From Stylophora pistillata (Eukaryota), in contig NW_019217818.1 in NCBI RefSeq assembly GCF_002571385.2, positions 277,594-341,593 of the forward strand: a stretch of 64,000 bases of DNA, written 5' to 3'. Position 1 is the stretch's first letter; each line of letters begins with the position of its first letter. Position numbers and translations under genes: made by a program. Positions 39,701 through 43,428 of this stretch are shown here, piece after piece. Under the pieces are notes generated by a model that ran no database searches, had not been told where the DNA came from, and worked only from the letters and a program-made list of their open reading frames with translations.

Positions 39701-42700
39701 TGTTCGTATTGTTCGTCTTCACGTTGTTTCTATTGAAAATATAGGAATGTAATCTTCGCATTTAATAATTCAATCGTTACTCGCGTGGAAAAGGGAATTC
39801 CGATTCAAGAACTTCAATGAAAAGTTTAATTTTATCTTTCATTATCACTTTGTAATCCTCGTAATCACGTTTCTTAATAAAAAAAATTAGACTAGTATCA
39901 GTCATTTAAACAATTAGGTGTCTCGTTAACAACGACTGTATTTAATTCAATTGCAAACGTATGACGAATAAACTAGAAAAAATTGTTTCATGAAAATGAC
40001 AAAACTTCAACCGAGATTTACAAAGTTTTCAAGTGTATAAGTTGACAAAATTAAGAAGAGCAAGAAATGAATGATATTAGCCAAGATTATAGCATTTATG
40101 GAAGATTAATCTTAGTAGATAAAATGAAACCTGACAAATGAACATGACAAATAAATGTAACAGTAATTGAGATAGCTGCAATGTGATGTTGTGAGGAAAG
40201 AATAAAGTACGAGATGGAGGCTGCACGAACACAAGCTGTAAGTAGTCAAAGGAAATAATTGAGTGCAAGGACAAAAGTGAACATACACGAAGCGCATGCA
40301 TGGAATGAAAAACTGAACTAAAAGTACGTGTGACAGCAAGATAAACACGAACAATGCTAGAATAGGCCAGAGGTGCGCGTGTAAGAAGCACGAGGAAGTG
40401 CTCTTGGAAATGCAAAGTGGAGGTATGATTCACAAGCAAACAATCGTTACACGCTGACATATGCTGAAAAAAAAAAAGCAACAACAAAGGTATTACCTAT
40501 ACACAAAACATCGCGGGGATTAGATATGTGGTGCTAACAAAAATGCACAAAATGAAATATATTAAAAAATATTTGATCATCAATGGAATGAGAAAAGTCC
40601 AATCGCGGAGCAAATACCTCAGTATGAACTGAGCATTAACTCAACAACAAGCGACAAAATGACAGCAAAGACGACGTAACAAATGCCATGTTGAGATGTG
40701 CAAAAGGCAAAGAAGAGTGCTTCAGATGAAGCTACGAACTAATTCTTGTCAATCTCATTATTACAAATATGTCCCTGCACGTGTTATTTATTAACAATAA
40801 ATAGATCTTTATCGCAGGCCATCAAGTTTACAGATTATCACGTTTAGGTTGCATCTGTAGTTCCTTTACCACGTGTTTTTCCAGGGTTGACTTTCTCGTT
40901 GCACATGCAAGCAACGACAACGAATCTTGTTTAAAGAGGTTAAGCAGAGGTAGAACGAAACGAGCCAGAAATGGCCCCATGACTGACATTCACATGCACA
41001 ATGTAAATTACTTGGCATGCAATTTTCATGCAATTTCCATCAGGCAAATCAAAAAATATTCCACGAGAGGAATACCTTGATTTCTTGGAATTGCGTCTTG
41101 ATTTCATCTACTTTCCATGAAACGGCGCTCATCCAGCTCAACTTTTTCAAAGTAATGAGCATCCACTGCAAGAAATTCTCCAGGACAAAATTAAAGTGCA
41201 TGTGTTTCGAGCTATAGATGAAGATCATCGACTTGTGCTCCAACACATATTGATAAAGTGTTTCAATAATCACGAGGTAACGTTGCACGATGGTTGTTTG
41301 GTATGGGATGGACACTCGCCGCGAAGATGCAAGTTCAGCTTGATCAAAGACAGCGGATTCAGGTGTGATTGTCTCCACAGTTTCAGTTTCTTCGGATGGA
41401 ACCACTTCCTCTACTGCCTTGTGCATTCCTATGGTCCCTTCCATACTTCTCCGATGCACAGTTCTTGTAATTGTTCTTGTCACAACTCTCCTGATTCGTT
41501 CACCATGTTCGTCAATGTATTCTTCAAGTTCTTCTGGAGTGTCATGGTCTGTGTGGGATACAGGCAGTTCTACCGTTGTTGGTATAACATCTTCTGTCTC
41601 AGTATAAACAGGTGCTGCCGACTCAAATACCTTTGTACTCAAATCGTCTTTCTCTTCGTCGTCAGATTTACGTATTGTACTTCTGGTTGTAATGGTGCGT
41701 CTCACAATTCGTTTCACACGAACACCATTTTCATCAATGTATTCTTCAACGTCTTCTGGTGATCTATCTTCTGTTTGCGGTAAAGTAAATCCAACCTCTA
41801 CAGGTTCAATCTTCTGGCCTTCTCTTTTTATACTGGTTGTAGTGACAACACGCCTCACGGTTCTCCTTACAAGAACTCCATTTTCATCGATATATTCTTC
41901 GACTTGTTCTGGTGATTCATCTCCTGCTTGCGCTACAGAAAACTCAACCTTCTCTGGTTCAATCTGCTGACCTGGTCTCTTAATACTGGTTGTAGTTACA
42001 ACACGTCTCACAGTTCTCCTAACACGAACACCATTTTCATCAAGATATTCTTCAAACTCTTCTGGTGACTCCTCCGTTCTACCAACTGGCGGAGAGTCCA
42101 AATCAAGATAAACAGGTGCCGCAGATTCAAACACTTTCGGCCCTCTGTCATCTTTAATTTCATCCATCGCCTTTGGTGATTGGTCATTTGTTTTTGTTGG
42201 CAGTAAATTGGATTGTGGAATCTCCTCAAACGATGCACTCAACTCAGGAATTATCACTTTTTTCTCGACATGCACAGAAAACACGTTTTCTTTGACTTCT
42301 GGCCTTTCTTCGGGCTCGCCCCCTTCATTCTTCTCTCCTTCTTCCATTCCAGACTCCGCGGGTAGTGTGGGCGACGAAACATCGGATTCTTGTCTCGACG
42401 GGAACGCAACGGTAACGGGTTGTAACCTTCCTTTCAACTGAGTCGTGAAAACTGATTTGCTGAGCTTCTGTGTGCGACGACCAGCATCGGAAGCGATCAT
42501 CACTATCTGTTCTCCTTCCTCGGGTTCTTCTCTAAGCTTGGGTTCATCGCTATCATCAGTTTTCAGGACAACCTTCATTGATCCATCTCGCAGTACTGTT
42601 TTCATTGTTGTGGTATGAGAACTCCGCACTACTTTTGTTATCCGTTGACCGTGCTCGTCTGCGTACTCTTGTACCTCTTCTTTTGGCTCAGGAGGGATAT

Positions 42701-43428
42701 CGACATCCATTTCCAAGTCGGGCGCCTGACGTTCTACTCGCAGTATTGTTTTGGTGGTCGTTGCTTTGGCGATTCTCTTCACCTGACGTCCGTCTTGATC
42801 AACGTATTCCTCGATAACTTCTTCATCAGGATTATCACTTTTATCTACCGAGCTCTGCAAAGGAATACTTACCTCGCCTGGTTCCTCTTCCAAGAAAACA
42901 GGTTCTGCTGATTCAAACACGACTGTCTCCCTGTCATTGTCATCGTAATCTTCTTCGTCAGATGAAGCTCCCAGAAGCGGCCTTCCCCATTCAAATTCTT
43001 CCTGTTTAGGCTCTGCTTTAGATTTACTTGGGACTTGAAAGTTTAAACTTTCAACGGTACTCATTTCGACGGCTGTAACTCCAAAGGGAGAATTATCAGA
43101 ACTTTTTGCAACTGGTTTTCCTAATTCAAACGGTCTGGATGGAAGCAGTCCATCAGTTCTTTCAGTAGTAGGTTCCGTTTTCCCGGAGTTAGGAACCTCA
43201 AATGCTTCAAGTAGATTCTTTTTGACTGTGGTGACCTTAAAGGGACTGGAAGAATCACTGTCTGTTGGAGGTTCGTCATCCTAAAGATACAATGAAATAC
43301 CATGCGGGTCACTTAACTCCAAAGATAAAAGAGCCATTTCGCCCAACCGATGGCGATATCTCTTTATTGACCGGCAAGTCATGAACTGATGGTCACATCC
43401 AAACACAATATCTTTTTAGGCGGATTCA

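What the first reader, a model, noticed from the sequence alone, without database searches (positions are those of the whole stretch)
41076..43280. 735-aa insert with an array of ankyrin obscurin/titin-binding-like motifs inside a spectraplakin
Seen: six clear copies, plus one degenerate, of EE[YF]xDxxGxx[VI]x[RK]x[VI]xxxxT, for example EEYIDEHGERIRRVVTRTITR and EEYIDENGVRVKRIVRRTITT. Three are 153-nt tandem units at ~41.65-42.07 kb. There are also three VFESA[AE]PV[FY] motifs in acidic, Pro-rich spacer. Established (recalled): vertebrate ankyrin-B and sAnk1.5 bind obscurin/titin through a similar EE[YQ]xxD ExG xxVxKKxxRKxxR element. Inference: a multivalent docking platform linking a giant cytolinker to obscurin/titin-like proteins in cnidarian muscle. 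I do not know of this being described for spectraplakins.
Basis: partly seen in the sequence, partly recalled or inferred. Interest (0 to 1): 0.75.

Follow-up and report, generated by a model that had tools for sequence, protein, structure and literature searches.

The report
Repeat-rich insert exon in coral spectraplakin
A giant cytoskeleton-linking gene of a stony coral carries one large, expressed exon that encodes a floppy acidic segment studded with repeated short motifs, which sea anemones and other corals share in very different copy numbers; its proposed kinship with a vertebrate muscle ankyrin motif could not be shown.

Summary
Window 41076-43280 (minus strand) is one 2205-nt, phase-0 exon with six clear copies and one degenerate copy of an acidic-turn-basic motif and three VFESAxPV motifs. 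RNA contigs splice it to the upstream exon in 3 of 4 runs.

The host gene is a spectraplakin: spectrin repeats in the window, GAS2 25 kb downstream, and weak CH fragments 22 kb upstream. The genome is Stylophora pistillata.

A profile of the motif searched against 1.84 billion proteins found 49 hits. The best are the same exon in other anthozoans (Nematostella, Montipora, unnamed corals) with 10-26 copies, in open frames up to 3034 aa. The exon is conserved and its copy number varies.

A second coral gene on contig C146 encodes a 477-aa acidic protein with an N-terminal Cys cluster, two copies of the motif and another shared module.

None of the 49 hits is an ankyrin, and this coral has no copy in an ankyrin gene. 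The ankyrin/obscurin link therefore rests on pattern resemblance only.

Best reading: a lineage-specific multivalent docking or spring segment. It is a new variant of a known kind, of moderate interest. The scan flagged this same stretch once more under another title (s1-788947).

The parts
41076..43280 (-). Insert exon: 2205 nt, 735 codons, phase 0 at both ends
   Evidence: Open frame. AG acceptor and GT donor. RNA contigs cover 41075-43279 and join 43279/80 to 45835/6 in 3 of 4 runs.
42747..42827 (-). Motif copy 1 (DEEVIEEYVDQDGRQVKRIAKATTTKT), single-copy module kept across corals
42606..42686 (-). Motif copy 2 (PKEEVQEYADEHGQRITKVVRSSHTTT)
42429..42512 (-). Degenerate copy (EQIVMIASDAGRRTQKLSKSVFTTQLKG), conserved in this divergent form in other corals
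41988..42068 (-). Motif copy 3, first of three 51-aa (153-nt) tandem units
41835..41915 (-). Motif copy 4, second tandem unit
41682..41762 (-). Motif copy 5, third tandem unit
41460..41540 (-). Motif copy 6 (TPEELEEYIDEHGERIRRVVTRTITRT)
42894..42920 (-). VFESAEPVF module
   Evidence: kept in orthologues
42108..42134 (-). VFESAAPVY module
41604..41630 (-). VFESAAPVY module
42945..42998 (-). EFEWGRPLLGxSSDEEDY module, conserved in coral orthologues
43194..43241 (-). FKVTTVKK...F module at the start of the exon, recurring in orthologues
41076..41282 (-). Exon tail: helix-like stretch, then the first helix of a spectrin repeat (not insert)
   Evidence: The homologous stretch of Nematostella P0007 starts its Pfam Spectrin match at residue 2768. 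The same tail ends 11 of the 12 orthologues P0117-P0128 inspected.
43281..45835 (-). Upstream intron (GT..AG on the minus strand), removed in RNA
   Evidence: Joint 'skips 2555' in runs X4, X5 and X3
40904..41032 (-). Four UGCAUG hexamers within about 170 nt after the exon's donor
   Evidence: 4 of the 16 minus-strand TGCATG in the 64-kb window; the densest cluster there
45636..45835 (-). YCAY-rich start of the upstream intron
   Evidence: 10 YCAY in the first 200 nt; earlier finding s1-788931

Best explanation
Shown:
- Window 41076-43280 is one large in-frame exon of the Stylophora pistillata spectraplakin gene. It is transcribed and spliced as predicted.
- It encodes about 650 residues of acidic sequence without any Pfam domain (net charge -63 over residues 1-650; E 15%, V 11%, T 9%, S 8%, P 7.5%). 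It runs straight into a spectrin repeat of the rod.
- The segment is a mosaic of short conserved modules. The main one is a ~25-aa acidic-turn-basic unit, consensus P-E-E-V-E-E-[YF]-[VI]-D-E-N-G-[VR]-R-V-[RK]-R-[IV]-[VI]-[KR]-[RK]-T-[IV]-T-T.
- The same exon exists in Nematostella, Montipora and many unnamed corals, with 10-26 units and in open frames up to 3034 aa.
- A small paralogous coral protein carries two units behind an N-terminal Cys cluster.

Inferred:
- Each unit forms a beta-hairpin or an extended basic, Thr-rich strand that is masked or paired by its own acidic lead.
- The array serves as a multivalent docking surface for a partner still unknown. The most plausible partner type is an acidic or Ig-type cytoskeletal protein bound by electrostatics plus strand addition.
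- In this way the array ties the spectraplakin rod to another structure.
- The paralogue, if lipid-anchored, would tie the same partner to a membrane.
- Inclusion of the exon is probably regulated, given the UGCAUG cluster downstream and the YCAY array upstream.
For: Exon and expression. The joint is seen in 3 of 4 RNA runs. One 21,019-nt contig of X5 carries the whole exon with sequence running on at both sides.

Host gene:
- Spectrin PF00435 in 5 of 10 other minus-strand ORFs of the window.
- GAS2 at C35:251976-252095, minus strand, E 1.3e-16.
- Three weak CH fragments at C35:363785-364783, minus strand.
- A paper describes a CH-plakin-spectrin-GAS2 spectraplakin in S. pistillata (passages, PMC9145010).

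No known domain in the insert.

Conservation:
- 49 library hits, 14 of them at E<=1e-30. P0001 has 20 matched stretches and Nematostella P0007 has 26.
- Orthologues of 1733-2785 aa carry 11-25 regex copies (from the hits); P0065 (3034 aa) was read by eye only.
- Consensus built from 532 distinct copies.
- 12 synonymous against 8 non-synonymous differences.

Paralogue:
-.
- BLASTP E 2e-9 and 2e-8, including a VPEWMEE module.

Pattern shared with a proven docking site: rat sAnk1 R64-K73 is described as two hydrophobic clusters surrounded by positive residues. These are modelled as beta-sheet, with the charges needed for obscurin binding (section 7 and passages of PMC11927728).

Regulation hints; s1-788931 and s1-789059.
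Against:
- The 4-fold copy-number range between species fits a spacer or spring as well as a docking array.
- The strongly negative net charge could mean that the basic strands are neutralised in cis and are not free to bind.
- I could not test exon skipping. The downstream exon lay outside the 6-kb stretch allowed, and no alternative joint was seen.
- Skipping would also remove the first helix of a spectrin repeat, which argues for constitutive inclusion.
Confidence: 0.5

Rival explanations
1. The units are true relatives of the vertebrate ankyrin obscurin/titin-binding module (OTBD/OBD) and dock the spectraplakin to obscurin/titin-like, filamin or other Ig-domain proteins of coral muscle.
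For: Pattern resemblance:
- An acidic lead, a Gly turn, then a strand of hydrophobic pairs flanked by Arg/Lys.
- This compares with the description of the sAnk1 obscurin-binding stretches R64-K73 and K100-R108 as basic residues around hydrophobic clusters in a beta-sheet.

Other points:
- The small Cys-cluster paralogue parallels the small membrane-bound sAnk1.
- A paper title cited in PMC3575540 and PMC3695321 says the ankyrin-G OTBD binds plectin, a plakin, and filamin C (reference lists only).
- UGCAUG sites next to the exon fit muscle- or neuron-type splicing control as known from bilaterians (recalled).
Against: - No ankyrin among the 49 library-wide hits.
- No ankyrin chain among solved structures.
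- Word searches with P0015 and P0019 returned only coral-type proteins.
- The coral genome has no copy in an ankyrin gene.
- The OTBD modules are described as arising by duplications within vertebrates (passages of PMC2942773).
- The ankyrin-binding part of obscurin is its non-modular C-terminus (PMC12812942). Whether any cnidarian protein has such a part is unknown.
Confidence: 0.15
2. Elastic spacer. The acidic lead and the basic strand of each unit zip together into weak hairpins that open under load. The array would then be a length-tunable spring in the rod, as the PEVK segment is in titin, with no outside partner.
For: - Each unit pairs about 6 acidic residues with about 5 basic ones around an E-N-G turn.
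- Copy number varies from 6 to 26 between species while the flanks stay fixed.
- The surroundings are acidic and rich in Pro.
Against: - Several other sharply conserved short modules (VFESAxPVY, FEWGRPLLG, VPEWMEE) look like docking motifs rather than spring material.
- The stand-alone 477-aa paralogue with only two units cannot act as a spring in a rod.
- No mechanical data exist.
Confidence: 0.2
3. The basic strands bind acidic surfaces directly (tubulin tails, actin or acidic lipids). This would add a second filament- or membrane-binding region to the spectraplakin.
For: - Repeated R/K-rich strands.
- Spectraplakins bind microtubules through basic C-terminal regions (established knowledge, recalled).
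- The paralogue may be membrane-anchored.
Against: - Net charge of the insert is -63, so the segment as a whole should be repelled by tubulin tails and acidic lipids.
- No resemblance to known microtubule-binding repeats was found in Pfam.
Confidence: 0.1
4. Tolerated low-complexity expansion with no function of its own.
For: - Large differences in copy number.
- Tandem units 81% alike at the DNA level.
- An in-frame 3-nt length variant in one RNA run.
Against: - The motif and the other modules are kept between Nematostella and stony corals.
- The two first units and the degenerate one are single-copy and conserved.
- Synonymous differences are in excess, 12 against 8.
- The exon sits in abundant spliced RNA.
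Confidence: 0.05

Closest known systems
Obscurin-binding sequences (OBD/OTBD) of vertebrate ankyrins: sAnk1.5, ankyrin-B, ankyrin-G107
   Same: - Short modules in a non-globular part of a cytoskeletal adaptor.
- Hydrophobic pairs flanked by Arg/Lys, modelled as beta-strand, with the charges doing the binding (PMC11927728).
- More than one module per protein (PMC3575540 and PMC2942773).
- A small membrane-bound form exists beside the giant ones.
   Different: - The host protein is a spectraplakin, not an ankyrin.
- There are 6-26 units instead of two or three.
- No significant sequence match to ankyrins in any search run.
- The ankyrin modules are described as vertebrate inventions.
- The partner is unknown.
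Titin PEVK and similar spring segments of giant muscle proteins (recalled)
   Same: A long repeat-built segment without a fold, of mixed acidic and basic charge, inside a giant filament-associated protein. Its length differs between forms.
   Different: - Different repeat unit. Composition is only partly alike (E 15%, V 11%, P 7.5%, K 6%).
- Sharply conserved turn and strand positions (D 94%, G 96%) are not typical of an entropic spring.
Giant plakin-repeat exon of bilaterian spectraplakins (Shot, MACF1b; exon details recalled)
   Same: One very large exon adds a separate binding region within a spectraplakin.
   Different: - No plectin-repeat match in the coral exon.
- PMC9145010 (passages) places the origin of the plakin-repeat module in Bilateria.
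- The coral exon encodes sequence without a fold, not globular repeats.
Coral proteins auto-named 'myb-like protein V' (S. pistillata XP_022790616) and 'starmaker-like' (Montipora foliosa)
   Same: They carry two copies of the same motif and the VPEWMEE module. BLASTP E 2e-9 against an orthologue of the exon.
   Different: - Stand-alone proteins of about 470-530 aa with an N-terminal C-x3-CC-x-CC cluster and no spectrin repeats.
- Their database names come from acidic low-complexity composition, not from tested function.

Membership tests
Spectraplakin (host gene) | Long rod of spectrin repeats | tested here: met
   PF00435 in 5 of 10 minus-strand ORFs tested. ORF 3811-7449 has 8 stretches, E 2.4e-73.
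Spectraplakin (host gene) | C-terminal GAS2/GAR microtubule-binding domain | tested here: met
   PF02187 at C35:251976-252095, same strand, 25 kb beyond the window's low end, 68.8 bits. That it belongs to the same transcript is inferred.
Spectraplakin (host gene) | N-terminal calponin-homology actin-binding domain | tested here: inconclusive
   Three exon-sized CH fragments at C35:363785-364783, same strand, E 0.013-0.37, each below the cut-off. None at E<=1e-5.
Spectraplakin (host gene) | Plakin domain with embedded SH3 | tested here: inconclusive
   PF17902 gave no match anywhere, controls included. 10 upstream ORFs gave no Pfam hit. PMC9145010 reports a plakin domain in the S. pistillata protein (passages).
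Nesprin (alternative host) | C-terminal KASH domain | tested here: inconclusive
   PF10541 gave no match in the genome, and nothing rang in the controls either.
Ankyrin OTBD / obscurin-binding module | Significant sequence similarity to the ankyrin modules | tested here: not met
   The profile of 8 copies searched against 1.84 billion proteins gave 49 hits. No Ank, ZU5 or Death family appears among the 25 families shown of 41. No ankyrin in the PDB search. Power is low for a motif present 1-3 times. A small-database test with ankyrin tails was not possible.
Ankyrin OTBD / obscurin-binding module | Lies in the C-terminal regulatory region of an ankyrin | tested here: not met
   It lies in a spectraplakin. 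The only other locus in this genome is the C146 gene.
Ankyrin OTBD / obscurin-binding module | Hydrophobic clusters flanked by basic residues in a beta-strand | tested here: inconclusive
   The sequence pattern agrees with the published description.
Ankyrin OTBD / obscurin-binding module | Binds the obscurin C-terminus, titin, plectin or filamin C | not testable with these tools
   Needs a binding assay or complex modelling.
Ankyrin OTBD / obscurin-binding module | Muscle-specific alternative splicing | not tested
   Only whole-colony RNA contigs were laid. UGCAUG and YCAY clusters beside the exon are hints.
Plakin (plectin) repeat domain | Match to the plectin repeat, PF00681 | tested here: not met
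   No such hit at E<=1 on the exon's 743-aa frame.

The most novel reading that the evidence does not exclude
The acidic-turn-basic unit is an old eumetazoan cytoskeletal docking module, and the vertebrate ankyrin obscurin-binding sequences are late, reduced descendants of it. On this reading cnidarians keep it in its original setting: a giant array in the spectraplakin rod, plus a small lipid-anchored protein that plays the part sAnk1.5 plays at the sarcoplasmic reticulum. Linking membrane to cytolinker to Ig-domain filament would then predate bilaterian striated muscle.
Probability: 0.12. Interest if true: 0.75.

Novelty: new variant of a known kind. Interest (0 to 1): 0.45.

Why it matters
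Spectraplakins are the main cross-linkers of actin, microtubules and membranes. How they gained lineage-specific binding regions is poorly charted outside bilaterians.

This exon shows that anthozoans added a very large, fast-expanding docking or spring segment of their own at a fixed point of the rod. They also keep a small stand-alone relative of it. The paper on spectraplakin evolution that I read in passages (PMC9145010) describes the S. pistillata protein without mentioning the segment.

If the unit proves to bind Ig-domain or acidic cytoskeletal proteins, it would give a handle on how coral and anemone cells couple the cytoskeleton to membranes. That is relevant to muscle, neurites and the calcifying epithelium.

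If the link to ankyrin modules were ever shown, it would move the origin of that module from vertebrates back to the base of the eumetazoans.

Tried and rejected
Known-family checks on the exon
- Pfam on the exon gave nothing above cut-off.
- Rfam on 40500-46100 gave only a sub-threshold tmRNA match, dismissed.
- The solved-structure search with the motif profile gave three chance hits, E 0.86-8.2.
- EF-hand-like calcium loop: considered for D-E-N-G and rejected by eye. The first, eighth and twelfth loop positions do not fit the consensus.
- Secreted acidic skeletal-matrix protein, suggested by the 'starmaker-like' name: rejected. The segment is internal to a cytoplasmic giant protein.

False hits in the library search
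- Seven of the 49 library hits look bacterial or unrelated: P0024, P0035, P0036, P0040, P0041, P0042 and P0049. They match only the first half of the profile.
- Of the 49, 5 carry SSSPR-51 and 1 carries HNH_repeat.
- I left these seven out of the consensus.

Organisms behind the unnamed hits
- I looked up 30 clusters. Only 4 carry an organism name, and all 4 are anthozoan. I cannot say whether the motif array exists outside Anthozoa.
- The well-annotated bilaterian proteomes in the library gave no hit at E<=1e-3.

PF27288.1
- It is precomputed on 8 of 14 orthologues.
- It is absent from the local Pfam and from the papers searched.
- Part of this exon may therefore already be catalogued under a name I could not see.

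Papers
- Hopitzan 2006 and Busby 2011 are not held.
- The sAnk1 sequence is in a figure of PMC11927728, and figures are not held.
- Supplements of PMC9145010 might show domain maps of the coral protein.

Exon skipping
- Not testable. The single read-laying run had to stay under 6,000 letters and could not hold both neighbouring exons.
- Contigs of X4, X3 and X13 end at the upstream exon's donor. Low-depth intron contigs (unspliced RNA) explain this as well as alternative splicing would.

Spliced model
- I searched the gene exon by exon and built no joined model.
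Full report
WHAT IS THERE

On the minus strand the frame is open for 743 codons. An AG acceptor (…tctttag|GATGAC) sits at 43280 and a GT donor (ATCAAG|gtattc) at 41076.

A pattern search finds six motif copies at exon residues 157, 204, 410, 461, 512 and 586. It finds three VFESAxPV[FY] at residues 121, 383 and 551 (window coordinates). The copies at 410, 461 and 512 are 51 aa apart. Tandem Repeats Finder reports a 153-nt period over 41716-42068, with 2.3 copies and 81% matches.

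The degenerate seventh copy (residues 257-284) is kept in that divergent form in the consensus of a 23-row alignment (the window's exon and 22 relatives). It is an old separate module, not a decayed recent copy.

Residues 1-650 are acidic: net charge -63, with E 15%, V 11%, T 9%, S 8% and P 7.5%. Pfam finds nothing above cut-off.

The last 40 residues of the exon correspond to the start of a Pfam Spectrin stretch in the Nematostella homologue. That stretch covers P0007 residues 2768-2869, and the homologous FxFVLE…W helix starts at 2772. With the 29-residue helix-like stretch before them, the last ~70 residues are probably rod rather than insert. The insert proper is therefore about 650-665 aa.

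HOST GENE AND ORGANISM

- Five of ten other minus-strand ORFs of the window are spectrin repeats. ORF 3811-7449 has 8 stretches at E 2.4e-73.
- Ten short upstream ORFs gave no Pfam hit.
- The window is G000:C35:277594-341593. A GAS2 domain lies on the same strand at C35:251976-252095 (E 1.3e-16).
- Three weak CH fragments lie on the same strand at C35:363785-364783. Their E-values are 0.013-0.37, each below the cut-off.
- KASH and SH3_10 searches found nothing, but their controls were silent too, so they say nothing.
- The order CH … spectrin repeats … GAS2 over at least 113 kb is that of a spectraplakin. That all three parts belong to one transcript is inferred.
- A second locus (below) translates to S. 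pistillata XP_022790616 at 436 of 436 residues, on a contig of the same length, 623,878. The genome is therefore Stylophora pistillata.
- PMC9145010 (passages read) describes a 'true spectraplakin' with CH, plakin, spectrin and GAS2 parts in this species. In those passages it does not mention the insert.

EXPRESSION

Eighteen of 24 listed runs hold the exon, six of them on record as RNA. I laid the contigs of four RNA runs on window 40080-46060.

- The joint 43279/80 to 45835/6 (skips 2555, GT..AG on the minus strand) appears in 3 of 4 runs: X4, X5 and X3.
- It does not appear in X13, where the exon is covered by three separate contigs.
- In X5 one contig of 21,019 nt holds the whole exon and the upstream exon, and runs on unlike sequence below 41075, which is the next exon.
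- I saw no joint from the proposed internal first exon (44885-44947; s1-789007).
- Skipping of the exon could not be tested, because the downstream exon lay outside the 6-kb stretch allowed.
- Contig depths are lower on the exon than on the upstream exon in X4 (39 against 70), X3 (7-9 against 13.5) and X13 (4-9 against 11). The tool warns that such depths are poor measures, so I draw nothing from them.
- Skipping would keep the frame but would remove the first helix of a spectrin repeat.
- Of 20 single-base differences in the exon, 12 are synonymous and 8 are not. That excess is expected under purifying selection.
- One run has an in-frame CTC insertion after 42068.

REGULATION HINTS

- Four UGCAUG hexamers lie within about 170 nt after the donor, at 40909, 40998, 41021 and 41032. 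The 64-kb window has 16 on this strand against 14.7 expected in all, and this is the densest cluster.
- The upstream intron starts with 10 YCAY in 200 nt. An earlier follow-up found this array conserved among corals (s1-788931).
- In bilaterians such sites mark Rbfox- and Nova-controlled exons (recalled). Here this is a hint only.

RELATIVES

A profile of the six copies found only one other locus in the 398-Mb genome: C146:506931-507179, with two copies at E 4.8e-5 and 2.6. All 10 candidates were scored, and 8 of them matched, 6 being the query copies themselves.

A profile of all eight copies (A2) was scored against 1,835,955,588 proteins. It gave 49 hits at E<=1e-3, 30 at E<=1e-10 and 14 at E<=1e-30.

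The top hits are the same exon from other species. They begin with the same FKVTTVKK, FEWGRPLLG and VFESA modules and end with the same spectrin-repeat start and exon boundary.

- P0001 has 20 matched stretches, P0002 has 18 and P0003 has 15.
- Nematostella vectensis A7SF37 (P0007, 3258 aa) has 26. It continues into spectrin repeats (Pfam Spectrin at residues 2768-2869); its fragment P0045 has four spectrin stretches before the first copies.
- P0009 is from Montipora foliosa.
- P0065, a cluster member of P0017, is a single 3034-aa open frame of insert-type sequence with the same ending.
- A word search with P0065 gave 14 hits among 8000 scored candidates. Twelve of them were new orthologues of 1733-2785 aa with 11-25 pattern copies. 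Eleven of those twelve end in the same spectrin start.

Identity to the window's exon is 83% (P0012), 69% (P0001) and 67% (P0124), against 6 copies here and about 20 there. Copy number therefore changes several-fold between fairly close corals.

In larger orthologues the units form a super-repeat of about 190 aa: two motif units, VFESAxPVY, VLPEWMVE and a TTLNREIVIPEI stretch (P0120).

Of 30 clusters looked up, only 4 carry an organism name, and all 4 are anthozoan.

Seven of the 49 hits match only the first half of the profile and are bacterial surface proteins or unrelated repeats. Of the 49, 5 carry SSSPR-51 and 1 carries HNH_repeat.

THE MOTIF

From 859 matched stretches I obtained 532 distinct 30-mers. 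Many come from near-identical cluster members, so they are not independent, and the seven false hits were left out. The consensus is P-E-E-V-E-E-[YF]-[VI]-D-E-N-G-[VR]-R-V-[RK]-R-[IV]-[VI]-[KR]-[RK]-T-[IV]-T-T-[TR]-[TS]. The strongest positions are E(-1) 93%, D(+2) 94%, G(+5) 96% and V(+8) 89%.

Each unit is thus an acidic lead, an E-N-G turn, and a strand in which hydrophobic pairs are flanked by Arg/Lys and followed by a Thr run. I infer a beta-hairpin or an extended strand.

THE SMALL PARALOGUE

C146 encodes a 477-aa acidic protein. NCBI auto-names it 'myb-like protein V' in S. pistillata and 'starmaker-like' in Montipora.

- It starts with M-K-A-C-x3-C-C-x-C-C. I read this as a likely palmitoylation cluster, an inference based on recalled examples.
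- It has two motif units about 59 aa apart and a VPEWMEE module.
- BLASTP gives E 2e-9 against P0001 over an alignment that includes VPEWMEE, and E 2e-8 against the window's exon.
- Its 47 word-search relatives are unnamed, except for the one from Montipora foliosa ('starmaker-like').
- Its cluster members sit on 2.3-2.7-kb Logan contigs, which is consistent with an mRNA.

THE ANKYRIN QUESTION

What I could read:
- The ankyrin OTBD is a 76-aa muscle sequence with two obscurin-binding domains (PMC3575540, passages).
- Modules I-III arose by duplications in vertebrates (PMC2942773, passages and one legend).
- In rat sAnk1 the obscurin-binding stretches are R64-K73 and K100-R108. [quoted passage not shown]
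- The charges bind obscurin. AlphaFold and circular dichroism point to a beta-sheet rather than ankyrin-like repeats (PMC11927728, section 7 and passages).

The coral strand has the same character.

Every sequence test was nevertheless negative:
- There is no ankyrin among the 49 library hits. All 49 were scanned with Pfam, and no Ank, ZU5 or Death family appears among the 25 families shown of 41. A canonical ankyrin would rank there.
- There is no ankyrin in the PDB search.
- The P0015 search found nothing beyond itself and two close relatives, 3 hits of 571 candidates.
- There is no copy in a coral ankyrin gene.

These tests are weak for a motif present one to three times, and I had no tool-supplied ankyrin tail for a focused search. 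I therefore rate homology as unlikely but open, and functional likeness as plausible.

VERDICT

The exon is real, expressed, under constraint, conserved across hexacorallian anthozoans and very variable in copy number.

The best-supported reading is a lineage-specific multivalent docking segment of the spectraplakin rod, possibly doubling as a spring, with a small and probably lipid-anchored paralogue.

I found no paper describing it (searches). An unnamed Pfam accession, PF27288.1, on 8 of 14 orthologues may mean that part of it is already catalogued.

Noticed in passing
window 43417-43835: A 419-bp dispersed repeat lies in the intron just above the insert exon. In the genome, 40 of 289 candidate copies were scored, and all are 97-100% identical. 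RNA contig depth there is in the thousands, with many different flanks. It is a young, transcribed, probably non-autonomous mobile element. It has no Rfam match.
   Followed up: partly
G000:C146:506658-508094 (L007, L010, L011): A 477-aa acidic protein, auto-named 'myb-like protein V' in S. pistillata. It has an N-terminal C-x3-CC-x-CC cluster, two copies of the motif and a VPEWMEE module. The only named relative is from another coral, Montipora; the other 46 hits are unnamed.
   Followed up: partly
proteins P0117-P0123 and P0126 (orthologues of the exon): Pfam accession PF27288.1 is precomputed on 8 of 14 hits. It is absent from the local Pfam copy and from the papers searched. Its name and extent are unknown.
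   Followed up: partly
window 40904-41032, minus strand: Four UGCAUG hexamers lie right after the exon's donor. This is the densest cluster of the 16 in the window. Another first-stage note flagged the same place (s1-789059).
   Followed up: partly
proteins P0018 and P0043 (unnamed ENA assemblies): P0018 (1390 aa) is thirteen units of about 100 aa, each holding the motif. P0043 (670 aa) is built of a related VDxEGRRIVTKTVTTTTYE repeat. The organisms and host genes are unknown.
   Followed up: no
window 42068: An in-frame CTC insertion is present in the RNA contig of run X5. It adds one residue in the acidic lead of motif copy 3.
   Followed up: partly
G000:C35:363785-364783 and C35:251976-252095: CH-domain fragments and a GAS2 domain lie on the window's coding strand. 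They place the gene's ends at least 113 kb apart.
   Followed up: partly
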